Below are positions 2,972 through 64,000 of a stretch of 64,000 nt of DNA, in pieces. Each line of letters opens with the position of its first letter. Within the stretch, counting starts at the first letter, position 1. The position numbers and the translations under genes were made by a program. This DNA is from Octopus sinensis (lineage: Eukaryota): assembly GCF_006345805.1 (NCBI RefSeq), contig NC_043006.1, positions 74,338,001 through 74,402,000 on the forward strand, given 5' to 3'. Under the pieces are notes generated by a model. It was not told where the DNA came from, did not search any database, and saw only the letters and a program-made list of their open reading frames with translations.

Positions 2972-3466
2972 GTCTTGGTATAAAAGATGACCTACAGCAA
3001 ATATTCTGCTCAATACCAAAGATTTGCTTGTCAGTTGTTTGACCTTAATCAGTTGAGCAAGACCCTTAGTGGCTGACGATATGTGCATCTCTGATAAACG
3101 AGGAAAAGTAGTGGGGGATCATCATAGCCATGTCTTGAGAGAGATTCTTTGGGATTTGAATAATTCACTTCTGGAAACTTGGGTGTTTTGTTCAACATCC
3201 TTAAACAACCCTTATTCAGGGACCTTTTGAACGGGATGAGTTACTCAACCAGAAGAAAATTCTAACTGGGCCCCACCTGCAAGTTCATGTGCTGTTTATT
3301 TTTATATGAGATCACCATGTCGCAGACATATGGTTGTGATACATGTGCCTAGTGTACCCTTATCAGACGGGTAGTCATGATGGGTATACGGGGCTTCGTA
3401 TATTTTACCCCAGTGTCACTCTGATGGCATGCACTGCTCTCTCACTCAATAATAATAATAATAGTA

Positions 3467-3495
<29 letters not shown>
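2972..3495 (+). mobile_element. (AAT)n-tailed, (AAT)n-targeting retroposon, 5'-truncated
   Basis: Homologous to 9273-9688 and 27713-28157; ends ...CTCTCTCACTC-(AAT)n. Confidence 0.8.
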
Positions 3496-3497
<2 letters not shown>

Positions 3498-3635
3498 GAT
3501 TACCATGTCGCGCACATATGGTTGTGATGCATGTGCCTGGTGTACCCTTATCAGACGGGTAGTCATGATGGGTATATTGGGCTTCGTATATTTTACCCCA
3601 GTGTCACTTTGATGGCATGCACTGCTCTCTCACTC

Positions 3636-3669
<34 letters not shown>

Positions 3670-3680
3670 TAATAATAATA
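3498..3680 (+). mobile_element. Second short 3' fragment of the same retroposon, in the (AAT)n tail of the first
   Basis: Repeats about 3313-3447 and carries its own (AAT)n tail. Confidence 0.8.
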
Positions 3681-3798
3681 ATAATAATAATAGTGATAAT
3701 GATGATGATGATGATGATGATAATAATGATGATGATGATGATAACAACAACATCGAAAAATACCTTAGGAATGCGAACCCAGGTTCGAAATTTCCCCA

Positions 3799-3845
3799 AG
3801 ACACCTGATGAACGCTGGAGGGTATACCAGCCGAAAAGTTGTGTT
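3799..3845 (+). ncRNA. Minimal type I hammerhead ribozyme (PLE type), probably mutated copy
   Basis: GACAC-CTGATGA-A-C-GCTGG-agggtata-CCAGC-C-GAAA-AG-TT-GTGTT. Stem I GACAC/GTGTT, stem II GCTGG/CCAGC; C3813 and A3837 break pairs expected in an active copy (GAAACGTT). Confidence 0.7.
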
Positions 3846-4071
3846 AAAAACAAACAGGATGATACAAAATTCCGTCAATTGTAAATAATATAATGTACGT
3901 AATTCCTCATCTCTTAAATATAGAACTACAACAGAAATATAGAAACGAGGTGAACCTAGAAATATAATTGTGTCAAATGAGAAAAAAATGCTTCAACAAA
4001 CAAATATGCACAAATAACGTAGTTTGCTATCTATCCCAGTGCTGTATATAAATAAACTCATAATTACAAAG

Positions 4072-4120
<49 letters not shown>

Positions 4121-4267
4121 AAATAAATATAAGAGAGTGGTCACTATATGGCTCACTCTAGCACCAGTTAATCCAAAAGGTTTCAACCACAAAGATACAT
4201 GTTTCCCATGAAAGTCAGTACGATTGTTAGCTCACACGGACAGGGCAAATAAAAATAACAAAAATAC

Positions 4268-4360
4268 AGATTATTTTGGGACAATTGTTTCGCTATTAAT
4301 GAATTAAATGTAATTTTACTTACAAAAAACCCACTTGTAGCTCGTCAGCCAAAACTATCT
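4268..4360 (-). ncRNA. Type I hammerhead ribozyme, copy 1 of the 529-bp unit
   Basis: Minus strand: AGATAGTTTTGG-CTGACGA-GCTA-(42 nt)-TAGC-GAAA-CAATTG-TC-CCAAAATAATCT. Complete CUGANGA/GAAA/UH core, 12-bp stem I (one G.U, one mismatch), 4-bp stem II, palindromic stem III, GUC cleavage triplet (C17 = 4280). Confidence 0.9.
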
Positions 4361-4796
4361 GGATGAATCCACTCAATCACACGCCAGATTTTACCATAAC
4401 GATAAATACGCGTGTGGTTCAATTGATTACATCCGACGTTATAATTCAAATGCCCCATAACAGCGCGCCAAACTTTCACGGAAAACAATACTGCATTAAG
4501 AAATAAATGCAGCATAATTATAATTAATTAATAAGGGTGAGAGAATTAGATACTAATTTAATAGTATATCTATTCAACACCAAGTGGCCTAGTCCTCCGA
4601 GAAACCTGGATTATTATAATATTTTATAATATATTATAATATTTTTACAAAATAATATAAGAGAGTGGTCACTATATGGCTCACTCTAGCACCAGTTAAT
4701 CCAAAAGGTTTCAACCACAAAGATACATGTTTCCCATGAAAGTCAGTACGATTGTTAGCTCACACGGACAGGGCAAATAAAAAATAACAAAAATAC

Positions 4797-4890
4797 AGAT
4801 TATTTTGGGACAATTGTTTCGCTATTAATGAATTAAATGTAATTTTACTTACAAAAAAATCCACTTGCAGCTCGTCAGCCAAAACTATCT
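4797..4890 (-). ncRNA. Type I hammerhead ribozyme, copy 2 of the 529-bp unit
   Basis: Same fold, 529 bp from copy 1 (C17 = 4809). Stem II 5' strand is GCTG, so pairing with TAGC is kept by a G.U wobble. Confidence 0.9.
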
Positions 4891-5430
4891 GGATGAAATC
4901 CACTCAATCACACGCCAGATTTTACCATAACGATAAATACGCGTGTGGTTCAATTGATTACATCCGACGTTATAATTCAAATGCCCCAACTAACTGTATT
5001 TTTGTTATTTTTTATTTGCCCTGTCCGTGTGAGCTAACAATCGTACTGACTTTCATGGGAAACATGTATCTTTGTGGTTGAAACCTTTTGGATTAACTGG
5101 TGCTAGAGTGAGCCATATAGTGACCACTCTCTTATATTTATTTTGTAAAAATATTATAATATATTATAAAATATTATAATAATCCAGGTTTCTCGGAGCA
5201 CTAGGCACTTGGTGTTGAATAGATATACTATTAAATTAGTATCTAATTCTCTCACCTTATTAATTAATTATAATTATGCTGCATTTATTTCTTAATGCAG
5301 TATTTGTTTTCCGTGAAAGTTTGGCGCGCTTAGTTGGGGCATTTGAATTATAACGTCGGATAATCAATTGAACCACACGCGTATTTATCGTTATGGTAAA
5401 ATCTGGCGTGTGATTGAGTGGATTTCATCC

Positions 5431-5523
5431 AGATAGTTTGGCTGACGAGCTACAAGTGGATTTTTTTGTAAGTAAAATTACATTTAATTCATTAATAGCG
5501 AAACAATTGTCCCAAAATAATCT
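5431..5523 (+). ncRNA. Type I hammerhead ribozyme, copy 3 (inverted array)
   Basis: CTGACGA 5442-5448, GCTA/TAGC, GAAA 5500-5503, CAATTG-TC (C17 = 5511), CCAAAATAATCT. One T is missing in the stem I 5' strand (possible homopolymer error). Confidence 0.88.
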
Positions 5524-6721
5524 GTATTTTTGTTATTTTTTATTTGCCCTGTCCGTGTGAGCTAACAATCGTACTGACTTTCATGGGAAACATGTATCTT
5601 GTGGTTGTGAAACCTTTTGGATTAACTGGTGCTAGAGTGAGCCATATAGTGACCACTCTCTTATATTTATTTTGTAAAAATATTATAATATATTATAAAA
5701 TATTATAATAATCCAGGTTTCTCGGGGCACTAGGCCACTTGGTGTTGAATAGATATACTATTAAATTAGTATCTAATTCTCTCACCCTTATTAATTAATT
5801 ATATATATATATATATATTCTGATTGTGGATTACGGAAATGCAACAACTAGTGTTTATTTATTCATAGACAAGAAATTGAGTGGGTGAGAGAAAAAGAAA
5901 GAGAAAGCGAGGACAGAGGAAAGAGAGAGGAGAGAGAGAGAGAGAGAGAGAGAGGCAGACTGACAGATAGACAGACAGAGCGGCGAATACAAATACGTGT
6001 ACAGAAATACAATCAACGCGAATACACACGAGAGTCTTTTCTTTGCGTTTGCATGTTCGCGATGAAGAGAGACAGAGCCGGAAACAAAGAAAAAGAAAGA
6101 CAGACAAACAGAGAGAGAGAGAGAGAGTGGGAGATAGAGAGACAGAGACACGCACACATAGAAAGACAGGAGGGAGGGAGGGAGAGAGAGAGAGAGAAAG
6201 CGTGGGAGAGAAAGAGAAAGAAACAGACAGAGATTCAGATCGACAAAGACTGACACACTGGCGGGCAGGGAGTCAGACAGAAAGACAGAATACGTTTTAG
6301 TCGTTTCATTATTTCATCTCGTACTGAAGAGCATCGCGTTGCGCAGAAATACACACAAGGACTTTATTGAATGAAGTGTTATTTGATCATTGCCAGCTAA
6401 CACTGTTATTACTGGTCGTGTGATGGTGGTGAGGATATTGGTGGTGGTGGTGGCCGTTCGGCTGCAGTTGTTGGAGGTGATGGCGTTAGTCGAATGAGAG
6501 AAATTGCGAAGCATTGGATCTTAATGCCTTTCGGTATATATACAGTGCTTTCGTCACGAAAGTTCAAAACCACTGCGGGGCATCAAAACTGCATTTTATT
6601 GCTCTGGGGGTTAGAGTTATCGTTGTGGTTACTAACTATCTGCAGGTCGTCGTTACTAATCGAAGCAACCTGAGATCAAAATGCGTTTCAGTTATAGACA
6701 AGTATTCATATCTCTGTTACT

Positions 6722-11649: not shown

Positions 11650-12250
11650 ATACGCAGGTGAGATGAATAAACTGTCATCTAAATTACGTAAAAATGAAAA
11701 TAACACTGACATCCCATTTTAACACATACATTTACAAAAATTACATAAAAATATGTTGAAATACTGAAGAGGAAATTTAGTCAAGAAAATCGCCATTGGC
11801 TTCAACCACGGCCACCAGACGACTTCGGAATCACTTGCAACCCTTCTGGATGGTTTTGTTTAAGCTGGTGAATGCTGCCATAATCCTTACGTTCGGGTTA
11901 TCTGGTGTTACAAGAAGTTTTGCTGGTCATTCGCTCAACTACGCCACACGCATAATAATCAAAGGGGCTGCAGTCTGGGGAGTTACGTTGCCAGATGTTA
12001 GAGGTGATGTGGTCGCAGAAATTGTCTGACAGCCATGACTGAGTACTTTTGTTTGTGTGCAAAGTCATGTTGCGAGACATGGAGTGTTTCACCAGTTACC
12101 CTCTTGACCCAGGGTAGTAGTACCTCGTCCAGGCACTTGATGTAGGCCTCCGTGTTGAGTGTGAGGTCGTGTGGGAAGATGAATGTATCACTCTCGATAC
12201 ATGTCATCTGATTGCAATGTCCTGAGATTGACATCCAAACAAGCTCGTTC
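11650..12250 (-). mobile_element. Tc1/mariner transposase C-terminal relic
   Basis: FPHDLTLNTEAYIKCLDEVLLPWVKRV, then WLSDNFCDHITSNIWQRNSPDCSPFDYYACGVVE (degenerate WPPNSPDCNPLDY motif); frameshifted. Confidence 0.8.
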
Positions 12251-12258
12251 TGCAGGTT

Positions 12259-12292
<34 letters not shown>

Positions 12293-12711
12293 TGTGTGTG
12301 TACATACATACATACATACATACATACATACAGATAGACATATTTACATGTGTGTTTTTGTGTTTGCACCAATACCTCTTGCTTGAAAACCGGTGTTGAG
12401 TTGTCTTTACGTCGTCGTAACTCTTCAAAGCGATGTCTCAGTATGACCGCAGTCCAATGACCGAAACAATCTGTAGGTACGACATGATATGAACGTATGC
12501 ATACTGGGCATGCGTACATACAAGTCTGTCTAGATCAATGACTTACTGATTGACGTGACATAATAGTATGGTTCTTTTTTAATTGAAGAACACGTTGGCG
12601 TGTACACAGTTACTGCATCAGGACGAGCAAGCTACGGCGATTGGTTGTTGCGCCGTTTAAAAAAAATTGTTTTCATTTTGGACATATCTCCAATACACAC
12701 ACACACAGATG

Positions 12712-26452: not shown

Positions 26453-27059
26453 GAAGGCGGCGAGCTGGCAGAAACGTTAGCACGCCGGGCGAAATGCGTA
26501 GCCGTATTTCGTCTGCCGTTACGTTATGAGTTCAAATTCCGCCGAGGTCGACTTTGCCTTTCATCCTGTCGGGGTCGATTAAATAAGTACCAGTTACGCA
26601 CTGGGGTCGATGTAATCGACTTAATCCGTTTGTCTGTCCTTGTTTGTACCCTCTGTGTTTAGCCCCTTGTGGGTAGTAAAGAAATAGGTATTTCGTCTGC
26701 CGTTACGTTACGTTCTGAGTTCAAATTTCGCCGAGGTCGAATTTGCCTTTCATTCTTTCGGAGTCGATAAATTAAGTACCAGTTACCCACTGGGGTCGAT
26801 GTAATCGACGTAATCCGTTTTTCTGTCCTTGTTTGACCTCTCAGTGTTTAGCCCCTTGTGGGTAGTAAAGAAATAGGTATTTCGTCTGCCGTTACGTTCT
26901 GAGTTCAAATTCCGTCGAGGTCAACTTTGCCTTTCATCTTTTCGGGGTTGATAAATTAAGTACCATTTACGCACTGAAGTCGATGTAATTGACTTAATCC
27001 GTTTGTCTGTCCTTGTTTGTACCCTCTGTGTTTAGCCCTTTGTGGGCAGTAAAGAAACA
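26453..27059 (+). mobile_element. SINE family C: tRNA-like head plus three tandem 184-189-bp body units
   Basis: Units restart at 26504, 26688 and 26877 (GTATTTCGTCTGCCG); 14-bp TSD AGAAATATTAGCGT (26439-26452 and 27060-27073). Confidence 0.88.
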
Positions 27060-49062: not shown

Positions 49063-49581
49063 TATTTCTTTATTGCCCACAGGGAGCTAAACATAGAGGG
49101 GACAAACAAGGACAGACAAACAGATTAAGTCGATTATATCGACCCCAGTGCGTAACTGGTACTTATTTAATCGACCCCGAAATGATGGAAGGCAAAGTCG
49201 ACCTCGGCGGAATTTGAACTCAGAACGTAGCGCCAGACAAAATATCTATTTCTTTACTACCTACAAGGGGCTAAACACAGAGAGGACAGACAAACGGATT
49301 AAGTCGACCTCGGCGGAATTTGAACTCAGAACGTAGCGTCAGGCGAAATATCTATTTCTTTACTACCCACAAGGGGCTACACACAGAGGGGACAAATAAG
49401 GACGGACAGACGGATTAAGTCGATTATATCGACCCCAGTGCGTAACTGGTACTTATTTAATCGACCCCGAAAGGATGAAAGGCGAAGTCGACCTCGGCGG
49501 AATTTGAACTCAGAACGTAGTGGCAGACGAAATACGTCTACGCATTTCGCCCGACGTGCTAACGTTTCTGCCAGCTCGCCG
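49063..49581 (-). mobile_element. SINE family C multimer with an internally deleted unit
   Basis: Three B-box/AAAGTCGACCTCGGCGG segments; candidate TSD TAAATATT. Confidence 0.85.
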
Positions 49582-50299: not shown

Positions 50300-50470
50300 A
50301 AGGCCTGAAATTTGGGGCGTGGGGACTAGTCGATTACAACGACACCAGTGTTTTACTGGTACTTAATTTATCAACCCCGAAAGGATGAAAGGGAAAGTCG
50401 ACCTCGGCGGAATTTGAACTCAAAACGTAGCGATGGTCGAAATACCGCTTATCATTTCGTCTGGCGTGCT
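50300..50470 (-). mobile_element. SINE family C monomer
   Basis: Same body as the 26.5-kb units; further fragments at about 15770-15945, 48545-48650, 48880-49045 and 52530-52710. Confidence 0.75.
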
Positions 50471-58324: not shown

Positions 58325-58483
58325 CTTATTTACATATATATATTTATGTGTGTGTATATATATATATATATATATAAATATATGTGTGTGTGTGTGTATA
58401 TATATATATGTGTGTGTATATATATATATATGTGTGTGTGTGTGTAATATATATATATATATGTGTGTGTATATATATATATA

Positions 58484-58530
<47 letters not shown>

Positions 58531-58599
58531 ATATATGTGTATATATATATATATATGCGTGTGTGTGTGTATATATATACATATATATATATAACTGTA

Positions 58600-58657
<58 letters not shown>
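58325..58657. repeat. Compound (TA)/(TG) microsatellite
   Basis: Direct inspection. Confidence 0.95.
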
Positions 58658-61102: not shown

Positions 61103-61133
61103 TATATATATATATGTATGTATGTATGTATGT

Positions 61134-61167
<34 letters not shown>

Positions 61168-61252
61168 GTATATATATATATATATGTATGTATGTATATA
61201 TGTATGTATATATATATATATATGTATGTATATATATATGCATGCATGTATA

Positions 61253-61283
<31 letters not shown>

Positions 61284-61344
61284 TTATATATATGTATGTA
61301 TGTATATATATATGGATGTATGTATATATATATATGTATGTATG

Positions 61345-61411
<67 letters not shown>

Positions 61412-61698
61412 ATGTATGTATGTATATACAAAATGAGAAAATGGAGAAACATACCTAAATCAATCATCAACCATCAGATAATACCCAATCAATACTTTAT
61501 TGAACCATTACACAACAGTAATGACATTATACATAATATATTACAAATATAACAAGACATATGTATGTATATATATATATATTATGTATGTATTTATGTA
61601 TGTATATATATATATATATGTATGTATATAGATATCTATGTATATATATATGTATGTATATATATATATGTATGTATGTATATATATATATATGTATG

Positions 61699-61734
<36 letters not shown>

Positions 61735-61898
61735 ATATATATATATATATGTATGTAGTATATATATATATGTATGTATGTATATATATATATGTATGTA
61801 TTATGTATGTATGTTTATATATATGTATGTATGTATATATATATTATGGATGTATGTATATATATATATGTATGTATGTATGTATATATATATATATA

Positions 61899-61940
<42 letters not shown>

Positions 61941-62110
61941 ATATATGTATGTTGTATATACAAAATGAGAAAATGGAGAAACATACCTAAATCAATCATC
62001 AACCATCAGATAATACCCAATCAATACTTTATTGAACCATTACACAACAGTAATGACATTATACATAATATATTACAAATATAACAAGACATATGTATGT
62101 ATATATATAT
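61100..62110 (+). repeat. About 532-bp tandem duplication of (TA/TATG)n plus a unique about 135-bp segment
   Basis: CAAAATGAGAAAATGGAGAAACATACC...AAGACATATG is identical at 61429 and 61961. Confidence 0.85.
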
Positions 62111-63101
62111 ATATTATGTATGTATTTATGTATGTATATATTATATATATATATGTATGTGTATATATATATATATGTATATATATATGTATGTATATAT
62201 ATATATGTATGTATGTATATATATTATATGTATGTATGTATATATATATATATATATATATATAGGTATGTATGTATATAATATATATGTATATATATAT
62301 ATGTACATATGTATATATATGTATATATGTATATATACATATATATGTATATATACGTATTGATGTAAGTATGTATATATGCATATATATGTGTGTGTGT
62401 GTGTGCGTGTGCGTGCGTATGTATGTTTGTACGCATACCTAATTACATACATACATTAAATCGGCGAGCAGGCGAATTTGTCGCACTTGCTGTGCGGTAT
62501 TCGTTCTTGTTGCCACATCAATGTGAAACCTCCTTTTGAGTGCTATAAATATATCACGATTCTCTTATAAGGTGAGGTTAATCCTTCTTCTCTTCTTCTT
62601 TGTCCTTCTTCTTAACTTCTGCCTCCACCTCCACCTCCCCCGCGTTTCTTCTCCTCCCTTTGTCTCTGTTTGGAAGTAGATGTCAGTCTTTTCTCAGATT
62701 ATATAATACCCTGTTAAAAATTCGAAAGAACTCAGTTGTGCTTTGACCTGAAGATCGACGTGTTTTGTCAGCTTTAACCACCCAAAGCACAACGAACGTC
62801 TCAACCTTATATTTGTGATTCAATGTGTTCATAATACATCAGTTGTGTAGAAAAGAAATTTCAGATAGTAGATCAATATTTAATAGGCAGATATATTTTA
62901 CATAAGTTTCCACATATAACTAAAATGAAATCCAGTTGCTAGCAAACAAGGATAATCAGTAACTGTTTAACATGTGAATAACGAATGACATTTAACATAA
63001 ATTTAGTTAAAGGTGCAAACATATCTAATTACAACAGCATATCTCTTGATCGACACTATTTTGAATAAGGCAATTTGCATTCCCAAAGTGTACTTCGAAA
63101 A

Positions 63102-63146
<45 letters not shown>

Positions 63147-63411
63147 GATAATGTAATCTAAAGATTATATAAGCTATCTTGTTATACATTGTATCAGACT
63201 TTAGTTCTTTGGTATATTTCGGTGAGATCATATCTGGTTTTGAAAGAAAGGTTAAATGACTTTTGTATGGTTAAGGGGATAGCTTCAGTTTCAGATATAA
63301 ATAGTAAATTCATAATTAAATTAATATTGGCGCATCAATACACATTCATACAAGCGCACACATATACACTCACCCACATATAAATTGCTAGATACAGACA
63401 CACACCATACA

Positions 63412-63419
63412 TTTATATA

Positions 63420-63481
<62 letters not shown>

Positions 63482-63590
63482 TTATATTTATATATATATA
63501 TTTATATATAATATATTTATATATTATATTTATATTATATATATATATTTATATATAATATATTTATATATATATATATTTATATATATA

Positions 63591-63666
<76 letters not shown>

Positions 63667-63671
63667 TATAT

Positions 63672-63704
<33 letters not shown>

Positions 63705-64000
63705 TTATATATATATTTATATATATATATATTATAATATATTTATATATTTATATTTATATTTATATATATATATTATATTATATAATATATATATATA
63801 TATAATATATATTATATTTATATATATATATTTATATATATTATATTTATATATATTATATATATATATAATATATATTATATATATATTATATATATAT
63901 ATTTATATATATATATATATAATATATATATATTATATATATTATATATATATATATATTTATATATATTTATATATATATTATATATATATATAATATA
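63412..64000. repeat. Long interrupted (TA)n tract running off the window end
   Basis: About 590 bp, almost pure A/T. Confidence 0.95.

What the first reader, a model, noticed from the sequence alone, without database searches (positions are those of the whole stretch)
4119..5794. 529-bp tandem repeat with one canonical hammerhead ribozyme per unit (retrozyme/circRNA-like satellite)
Seen: three intact type I HHR folds (4268-4360 minus, 4797-4890 minus, 5431-5523 plus), each with the full CUGACGA/GAAA/GUC core, a long stem I and a self-complementary stem III (ACAATTGT). I found no recognisable protein coding in the unit. Established: tandem HHR repeats (non-LTR retrozymes of corals, mussels, amphibians and trematodes; newt satellite 2; schistosome SMalpha) are transcribed as multimers, self-cleave to monomers and can circularise; palindromic stem III is typical of PLE-associated HHRs that cleave as dimers. 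Inference: a minus-strand transcript would release a 529-nt monomer (4808 to 4280), longer than the roughly 170-400 nt usually reported. I know of no description of this family in a cephalopod.
Basis: partly seen in the sequence, partly recalled or inferred. Interest (0 to 1): 0.92.

Follow-up and report, generated by a model that had tools for sequence, protein, structure and literature searches.

The report
Hammerhead-ribozyme retroelement inserted in a microsatellite
A real but ordinary find: one insertion of a small non-coding mobile element carrying a self-cutting RNA motif, of a kind already known from many animals, laid down as two short arrays facing each other inside a (TA)n microsatellite.

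Summary
A roughly 529-bp non-coding unit occurs 3.2 times between 4120 and 5803. Each HHR-bearing stretch has a complete type I hammerhead ribozyme (HHR) core. The cleavage-site cytosines (C17) are at 4280 (-), 4809 (-) and 5511 (+).

The locus is not one tandem array. It is two short arrays placed head to head, with 5' ends meeting at 4993/4994 and 3' ends abutting (TA)n on both sides. The arms are not mirror images.

Rfam Hammerhead_1 matches all three copies over the full model at 26-30 bits. That is below its 34-bit cut-off, because a 38-39 nt hairpin sits in loop 2. The 529-nt monomer folds far better than shuffles (z = -7.6). The unit has no ORF longer than 62 aa and no Pfam match.

The best reading is a non-autonomous "non-LTR retrozyme", dependent on a Penelope-like element (PLE). 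It would have been integrated in one event by reverse transcription primed from both strands of an AT-rich target.

The unit size is not unusual: published consensus lengths run from 51 to 972 bp. The host could not be identified and no other copy could be retrieved. Copy number, covariation, transcription, cleavage and circularisation are therefore untested. This is a new member of a known kind, of modest interest.

The parts
4074..4119 (.). Left flanking (TA)n microsatellite, about 45 bp, abutting the 3' end of the minus-strand array.
4120..4993 (-). Left array, read on the minus strand. It holds monomer nt ~345-529, then a full 1-529, then 1-~161 (numbered from the cleavage site). It carries two HHRs. 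Its 3' boundary is uncertain by about 40 nt because the unit is AT-rich there.
4280..4808 (-). The 529-nt monomer bounded by two HHR cleavage sites. It is the only unit at this locus that self-cleavage could release. GC is 33%. Circular MFE is -153.6 kcal/mol against -106 +/- 6 for shuffles.
4266..4362 (-). HHR copy 1. C3 is at 4348 and C17 at 4280, with cleavage after 4280. Helix I is 7 bp, an A.A mismatch, then 5 bp. Helix II spans 50 nt.
   Evidence: (30.1 bits, RF00163).
4795..4892 (-). HHR copy 2. C3 is at 4878 and C17 at 4809. The fourth pair of helix II is G-U instead of A-U.
   Evidence: (29.6 bits).
4993..4994 (.). Head-to-head junction of the two arrays. It is blunt, with no target sequence between them and no microhomology.
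4994..5803 (+). Right array, read on the plus strand. It holds monomer nt 11-529, then 1-~291, and carries one HHR.
5429..5525 (+). HHR copy 3. C3 is at 5442 and C17 at 5511. A one-base deletion shortens the inner helix I to 5 bp.
   Evidence: 26.2 bits.
5800..5818 (.). Right flanking (TA)n, about 19 bp. It overlaps the last 4 bases of the array, where the boundary is ambiguous.

Best explanation
The locus is a single insertion of a small non-autonomous retroelement of the metazoan "non-LTR retrozyme" kind. It is a ~529-nt non-coding, strongly self-paired RNA carrying one type I hammerhead ribozyme.

Inferred life cycle, none of it tested here: a multimeric transcript of the ribozyme strand self-cleaves after GUC. 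Cleavage probably needs two neighbouring ribozymes pairing through the palindromic ACAAUUGU helix III. The released monomer can be closed into a circle by a host RNA ligase. The linear multimer or the circle is then copied into DNA by the reverse transcriptase/GIY-YIG endonuclease of an autonomous Penelope-like element.

Inferred origin of this locus: the target, a (TA)n microsatellite, was nicked on both strands and each 3' end primed cDNA synthesis on more than one unit length of template. The two cDNAs ran towards each other and were joined 5' end to 5' end. That left two opposed, unequal partial arrays with their 3' ends against (TA)n.

What the sequence shows directly is the motif, the arrangement, the flanks, the lack of coding capacity and the predicted RNA structure.
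For: - **Ribozyme.** The core is complete, with three helices in type I order, in all three copies. Chance expectation is 0.005-0.03 per window. RF00163 matches the full model at 26-30 bits, E = 2e-5 to 8e-5 for the stretches searched. Helix II continues as an 8 bp + 5 bp rod, and the 106-nt motif folds with z = -3.2. Helix dimensions and the palindromic loop 3 match the canonical animal HHR described in PMC4209133.
- **Unit.** It is non-coding and 33% GC. Its circular MFE is z = -7.6 against shuffles. The antisense strand folds no better than shuffles.
- **One event.** Differences among the five unit segments are few, about 1-2%. Almost all are private to one segment, a star-like pattern expected if all units were identical on arrival.
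- **Retrotransposition rather than DNA duplication.** The two arms are not mirror images. Their 5' ends are at monomer nt ~345 and nt 11, and their 3' ends at ~161 and ~291. Both 5' ends meet with nothing between them, and both 3' ends face (TA)n.
- **Published mechanism that fits.** PLE insertions are typically partial tandems with an adjacent inverted 5'-truncated copy, and several clades prefer (TA)n (PMC8557442). A purified PLE protein nicks and extends both strands of AT-rich DNA (PMC11167929). Retrozymes are argued to be non-autonomous PLE derivatives, and 75% of families have at most 7 units per array.
Against: - Only one locus is available. No second copy exists in the 64 kb, and none was found in the metagenome, viral or prokaryotic collections or in the protein database. 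Multi-copy status and covariation are therefore untested.
- The HHR stays below Rfam's curated cut-off.
- The two 3' ends differ by about 130 nt. The one PLE studied in vitro starts reverse transcription at a fixed internal site, which gives a 30-40 bp "tail".
- (TA)n covers 3.5-5% of this window, so landing in it by chance has p of about 0.04.
- The folding asymmetry between strands (44 kcal/mol) lies within the upper tail of ordinary windows here (mean 15.5, sd 13, maximum 61).
- A 5-bp alternative pairing, GACGA with UUGUC, competes with the active core in the predicted MFE.
- No PLE gene was seen. Only the unit's own open frames and seven other stretches of the window were put through Pfam. 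No min-HHR motif occurs elsewhere in the window.
Confidence: 0.72

Rival explanations
1. It is a heavily truncated or internally deleted copy of an autonomous Penelope-like element. The repeated 529 bp would be that element's pseudo-LTR, not a separate retrozyme family.
For: HHRs sit in PLE pseudo-LTRs. The tandem/inverted architecture and (TA)n site are PLE signatures. Retrozyme consensus sequences in Xenopus are homologous to PLE termini.
Against: The repeat period equals the whole unit (529 bp), with two complete periods and no RT or endonuclease remnant. A partial tandem of an autonomous element would have the element's full length, roughly 3-4 kb, as its period. PLE HHRs are mostly minimal variants with helix II of 7-8 bp and no helix III. 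This one is the canonical type. In practice this rival merges with the main reading if retrozymes are PLE derivatives.
Confidence: 0.12
2. It is a local DNA-level duplication and inversion (small satellite, foldback-type palindrome or replication error) of a sequence that holds a hammerhead-like motif by chance. There would be no RNA function.
For: There are only 3.2 units at a single locus in a very repeat-rich window. The descriptor's chance rate of 0.005-0.03 per 64 kb implies hundreds of chance motifs in a genome of a few Gb. The Rfam score is below the gathering threshold.
Against: The arms are offset by about 190 nt at the centre and about 130 nt at the ends. A foldback or hairpin duplication would be symmetric. 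Beyond the descriptor, the motif has a palindromic loop 3, a G10.1-C11.1 pair, loop-2 nucleotides (CA...AAUA) that align to the Rfam consensus, and a well-formed helix II extension. The whole unit is strongly structured on the ribozyme strand.
Confidence: 0.1
3. The head-to-head arrangement is an assembly or long-read chimera artefact. The real locus would be a simple one-orientation array, or two separate loci.
For: PLE-type tandem/inverted structures are known to cause assembly problems. Several differences between units are single-base indels in homopolymer runs, a typical long-read error.
Against: A strand-switch chimera gives an exact mirror image about the switch point. Here the sequence to the right of 4993 is not the reverse complement of the sequence to its left. 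Both outer ends join the same kind of flank, (TA)n.
Confidence: 0.05

Closest known systems
Metazoan non-LTR retrozymes (Cervera & de la Pena 2020, PMC7229834; Li, Clavereau & Pollet 2026 preprint, 10.64898/2026.07.22.740005)
   Same: It has one type I HHR per non-coding, low-GC unit in direct repeats. It has no LTR and the monomer is predicted to be highly self-paired. Arrays are short, and the unit length falls within the reported 51-972 bp range.
   Different: The unit is larger than the 170-400 nt first reported for invertebrates. The HHR carries a 38-39 nt hairpin inserted in loop 2. The locus is a head-to-head pair of arrays. No expression, circle or copy-number data exist. The literature searches found no cephalopod family, but the host here is unverified.
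Penelope-like elements and their HHR-bearing pseudo-LTRs (PMC4209133, PMC8557442, PMC11167929)
   Same: It shows the partial tandem plus adjacent inverted 5'-truncated copy. It is inserted in (TA)n/AT-rich DNA, and the HHR has a palindromic helix III. Priming from both strands, shown in vitro for a PLE, would produce exactly this head-to-head layout.
   Different: It has no RT/GIY-YIG ORF. The HHR is canonical rather than minimal. The two 3' ends are not at one fixed site, so the "tail" signature is not seen.
Newt satellite 2 and Schistosoma SM-alpha hammerhead repeats (the basis of Rfam RF00163)
   Same: It has the same type I topology, CUGAYGA core, 4-bp helix II and very short palindromic helix III that favours cleavage as a dimer. 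The Rfam model built on these aligns end to end.
   Different: Those are high-copy families with long arrays and units of about 330 bp. This locus has 3.2 units of 529 bp and an extended helix II, and it scores under the family threshold.

Membership tests
Hammerhead ribozyme, type I (Rfam RF00163) | Conserved core: C3 U4 G5 A6 N7 G8 A9, G12 A13 A14, the A15.1-U16.1 pair and H17. | tested here: met
   All positions are present in all three copies.
Hammerhead ribozyme, type I (Rfam RF00163) | Three helices around the core with helix I open (type I), and a G10.1-C11.1 pair closing helix II. | tested here: met
   Helix I is 5-7 bp plus a further 5 bp. Helix II is 4 bp plus an extension. Helix III is 2 bp plus an AAUU loop.
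Hammerhead ribozyme, type I (Rfam RF00163) | Score at or above the curated gathering threshold of 34 bits. | tested here: not met
   The scores are 26.2, 29.6 and 30.1 bits. A 38-39 nt insertion in loop 2 is penalised.
Hammerhead ribozyme, type I (Rfam RF00163) | Compensatory changes in the helices across homologues. | not testable with these tools
   No homologue was retrievable. The only variation within the locus is A-U to G-U in helix II of copy 2 and a 1-nt deletion in helix I of copy 3.
Hammerhead ribozyme, type I (Rfam RF00163) | Mg2+-dependent self-cleavage after H17. | not testable with these tools
   This needs in vitro transcription.
Metazoan non-LTR retrozyme | At least two type I HHRs in the same orientation in direct repeats of a few hundred bp. 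| tested here: met
   The minus-strand array has HHRs with C17 at 4809 and 4280, 529 nt apart.
Metazoan non-LTR retrozyme | A non-coding unit with low GC and no LTR, PBS or PPT. | tested here: met
   GC is 33%. The longest ORF is 62 aa and there is no Pfam hit. No terminal direct repeats other than the unit itself were found. PBS and PPT were not searched for specifically.
Metazoan non-LTR retrozyme | A monomer RNA that is highly self-paired. | tested here: met
   67% of bases are paired, and the circular MFE has z = -7.6 against shuffles. It is only about 1.7 sd below ordinary windows of this locus's neighbourhood.
Metazoan non-LTR retrozyme | A dispersed multi-copy family in the genome. | not testable with these tools
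   No eukaryotic genome collection is on hand. There is no other copy in the 64 kb.
Metazoan non-LTR retrozyme | Expression as linear and circular monomer RNA. | not testable with these tools
   No transcriptome data are available.
Penelope-like element (autonomous) | An ORF with a telomerase-like RT and a GIY-YIG endonuclease. | tested here: not met
   There is no ORF and no Pfam match in the unit.
Penelope-like element (insertion signature) | A partial tandem with an adjacent inverted 5'-truncated copy. | tested here: met
   Two opposed partial arrays join at their 5' ends at 4993/4994. The signature is described.
Penelope-like element (insertion signature) | Insertion into AT-rich DNA or (TA)n. 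| tested here: met
   (TA)n lies at both outer ends. A chance landing has p of about 0.04, so one locus is only suggestive.
Penelope-like element (insertion signature) | A fixed internal reverse-transcription start, giving a constant 3' end with or without a 30-40 bp tail. | tested here: inconclusive
   The two 3' ends lie at monomer nt ~161 and ~291, not at one site. Both boundaries sit in AT-rich stretches and are blurred by the microsatellite. The feature is described.
Satellite DNA (newt satellite 2 type) | Long homogeneous one-orientation arrays. | tested here: not met
   There are 3.2 units in two orientations.
Foldback / palindromic duplication | Arms that are exact mirror images about the centre. 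| tested here: not met
   The arms start at monomer nt ~345 and nt 11, and end at ~161 and ~291.

The most novel reading that the evidence does not exclude
Its hammerhead variant would keep the canonical core and loop-2 nucleotides but carry a 39-nt hairpin inserted in loop 2. The anatomy of the locus would also be direct structural evidence that animal retrozymes are integrated by Penelope-type reverse transcription primed from both strands into (TA)n. That link has so far been argued mainly from co-occurrence and sequence relatedness.
Probability: 0.45. Interest if true: 0.45.

Novelty: new member of a known kind. Interest (0 to 1): 0.35.

Why it matters
If the family proves to be multi-copy and expressed, it would extend ribozyme-made circular RNAs to one more animal lineage. 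It would add a natural hammerhead that tolerates a large insertion in loop 2, which bears on how the loop 1-loop 2 contact works.

The locus is also a clean, young example of a retrozyme insertion. Two unequal arrays meet 5' end to 5' end inside a (TA)n tract. That layout matches what a Penelope-like enzyme does in vitro, namely nicking and extending both strands of AT-rich DNA. A genome-wide survey of such junctions could test that integration model without any biochemistry.

It does not change what is known about the class.

Tried and rejected
- **Rfam at default settings.** It found nothing in the whole window, and nothing for hammerheads at E <= 10 in a 2.1-kb stretch. The matches appeared only when 116-651 nt stretches were searched with laxer filters.
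- **Search for other copies by DNA pattern.** An HHR pattern with 23 specified bases gave one hit in the metagenome collection. It lies inside a bacterial coding region and is the roughly one chance match expected. The viral and prokaryotic genome collections gave none.
- **Search for other copies by protein.** I concatenated all open frames of the unit as a handle for spurious ORF calls in public assemblies. Nothing was found.
- **Host identification.** A mariner-like remnant at 11901-12534 (-) has only two database relatives, at 50% identity and without names. The SINE core string appears in no held paper. There are no tRNA genes.
- **Autonomous PLE or minimal HHRs nearby.** No min-HHR motif exists in the window. 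There is no Pfam hit in the more protein-like open frames that I submitted. The window was not scanned exhaustively in six frames.
- **Strand asymmetry of folding as evidence for selection on RNA structure.** I rejected it as decisive, because ordinary windows here reach 61 kcal/mol.
- **Foldback element and strand-switch artefact.** I rejected both because the arms are not mirror images.
- **Supplementary HHR lists of PMC8557442.** They are not held as text.
Full report
**What is there**

Reading 3600-6400 and the repeat search show a unit of about 529 bp. Its direct copies are spaced 528-531 bp apart. Long inverted matches of 97-100% link 4110-4883 to 4994-5808. blastn of one unit against the whole window finds copies only between 4081 and 5803.

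I cut the copies at the ribozyme cleavage sites and aligned them on the ribozyme strand. Numbering the monomer from the first base after the cleavage site gives this layout:
- On the minus strand, 4993 down to 4120 holds monomer nt ~345-529, a complete 1-529 (4808 to 4280), and 1-~161.
- On the plus strand, 4994 to 5803 holds nt 11-529 and 1-~291.

The two arrays therefore meet 5' end to 5' end at 4993/4994, with nothing between them. Their 3' ends point outwards into (TA)n, at 4074-4119 and 5800-5818.

**The ribozyme**

I wrote a descriptor requiring CUGANGA, a helix II of at least 3 bp, GAAA, a helix III of at least 2 bp, UH and a helix I of at least 4 bp. C3/C17 are 4348/4280 and 4878/4809 on the minus strand and 5442/5511 on the plus strand.

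Two hundred dinucleotide-preserving shuffles of the window give 0.03 hits per window. With helix I of at least 5 bp and helix II of at least 4 bp, they give 0.005. At that rate a genome of a few Gb would still hold hundreds of chance motifs, so the motif alone is not proof. The three copies are also one family, not three independent events.

Independent support comes from several features:
- Rfam. The whole-window scan at gathering thresholds and a 2.1-kb scan at E <= 10 reported no hammerhead. When 116-651 nt stretches were searched, RF00163 matched all three copies over the full model (positions 1-45). The scores were 30.1, 29.6 and 26.2 bits, with E-values of 2e-5 to 8e-5 for the stretches searched. 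The family cut-off is 34 bits.
- The cause of the shortfall. The alignment shows a 38-39 nt insertion in the middle of loop 2. The loop's flanking nucleotides, CA...AAUA, still align to the consensus.
- The inserted stretch folds as an 8-bp and a 5-bp helix, so helix II is a long rod. The 106-nt motif folds with z = -3.2.
- Helix III is A15.1-U16.1 and C15.2-G16.2 capped by AAUU. ACAAUUGU is self-complementary, and two copies can form an 8-bp intermolecular helix (-6.4 kcal/mol).

These dimensions match what PMC4209133 calls the canonical metazoan type I hammerhead. That paper gives helix I as 6 bp, helix II as 4 bp, and helix III as 1-2 bp with a 2-4 nt palindromic loop, and says cleavage works best as a dimer in tandem transcripts.

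One caveat: the predicted minimum-energy fold pairs GACGA of the core with UUGUC at the cleavage site. This is an inactive alternative that the real RNA would have to escape.

**The unit**

It has no ORF above 62 aa, and its open frames match no Pfam family. GC is 33%.

Folded as a circle, the 529-nt monomer reaches -153.6 kcal/mol against -106.1 +/- 6.2 for shuffles (z = -7.6), with 67% of bases paired. Its antisense strand reaches only -109.4.

I checked whether that strand asymmetry is special, and it is not clearly so. Ordinary 529-nt windows of this region show a mean absolute difference of 15.5 +/- 13 and a maximum of 61. Their better strand averages -118 +/- 20. The monomer is thus well structured for its composition, but only moderately so compared with its repeat-rich surroundings.

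**How the locus arose**

Differences among the five unit segments amount to about 1-2%. Almost every one is private to a single segment, and several are one-base indels in homopolymer runs. That star-like pattern fits units that were identical when they arrived.

The arms are not mirror images. Their inner ends are offset by about 190 nt and their outer ends by about 130 nt. This rules out a simple foldback duplication or a strand-switch chimera.

Two independent insertions would be expected to leave target sequence between them, and there is none. The simplest account is one event in which both strands of a nicked AT-rich target primed cDNA synthesis on a template longer than one unit (a multimer or a circle). 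The two cDNAs were then joined at their 5' ends.

The literature supports each element of this account:
- PLE insertions are typically partial tandems with an adjacent inverted 5'-truncated copy, and they show a microsatellite bias. Hydra-clade PLEs carry canonical HHRs, occur in molluscs among other phyla, and almost always sit in (TA)n (PMC8557442).
- A purified PLE protein nicks and extends both strands of AT-rich DNA, unlike R2 or L1 (PMC11167929).
- Animal retrozymes co-occur with PLEs and resemble their pseudo-LTRs (preprint 10.64898/2026.07.22.740005).

Two points weaken the fit:
- (TA)n covers 3.5-5% of this window, so a random landing has p of about 0.04.
- The studied PLE starts reverse transcription at a fixed internal site. 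Here the two 3' ends differ, although both lie in AT-rich stretches where the boundary with the microsatellite is blurred.

**What this locus could do**

Only the minus-strand array has two ribozymes, so only a minus-strand transcript could release a monomer (4808 to 4280, 529 nt). The plus-strand array would be cut once.

The ribozyme strand has T5-T7 runs inside helix II and just after the cleavage site. From general knowledge of Pol III termination, this makes Pol III an unlikely source of multimeric transcripts.

Transcription, cleavage, circularisation and mobility are all inferred from the family, not shown.

**Comparison and novelty**

The element meets every feature of a metazoan non-LTR retrozyme that I could test. 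It fails the defining feature of an autonomous PLE, which is the ORF. It is not a satellite in the sense of newt satellite 2.

Early invertebrate examples were 170-400 nt. Consensus lengths of 51-972 bp are now reported, averaging 650 bp in ray-finned fish, and most families have at most seven units per array.

Searches of the held literature found no hammerhead or retrozyme described from an octopus or other cephalopod. PLEs are annotated in Octopus vulgaris.

I could not confirm that this window is cephalopod. No copy or close protein relative was retrievable, and the abundant SINE core of the window (7 copies) matches no held paper.

The finding is real and correctly classified in kind. It is a new member of a known class, with a modest structural twist (the loop-2 hairpin) and an instructive insertion anatomy.

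Noticed in passing
window 26504-27057, 49195-49511, 50397-50421: A SINE-like repeat with a tRNA-type B-box-like core (GAGTTCAAATTCCGCCGAGGTCGAC) occurs 7 times, partly as 189-bp and 106-bp tandem copies. ARAGORN finds no intact tRNA gene in the window.
   Followed up: partly
window 3309-3684: A 188-bp unit is repeated twice at 94% identity, just upstream of the hammerhead locus, followed by long (AAT)n/(TGA)n runs. It is unrelated in sequence to the 529-bp unit.
   Followed up: no
window 11901-12534 (-): A frameshifted remnant that I read as the C-terminus of a mariner/Tc1-type transposase, judged by eye. It has no Pfam hit, and only two unnamed database relatives at about 50% identity.
   Followed up: partly
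window 58334-58630 and 61103-64000: Very large, degenerate (TA)n/(TG)n-rich tracts with GC of about 20% fill the last 3 kb of the window. Overall, (TA)n covers 3.5-5% of the window, which sets the background for any claim of (TA)n targeting.
   Followed up: partly
window 4612-4645, 5148-5181, 5677-5710 (monomer nt ~165-200): The unit itself holds a 35-nt TA-rich tract, (ATATTATAAT)n-like. If the mobilising enzyme prefers (TA)n, this could serve as a target for further insertions of the same family. It also blurs the left array's 3' boundary.
   Followed up: no
L001 1008-1090 (-), metagenome contig Ga0210057_1000062: This is the only public hit to the HHR search pattern. It lies inside a GC-rich bacterial coding region and is a chance match. 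It is a reminder that a 23-base gapped HHR pattern yields about one false hit per collection.
   Followed up: yes
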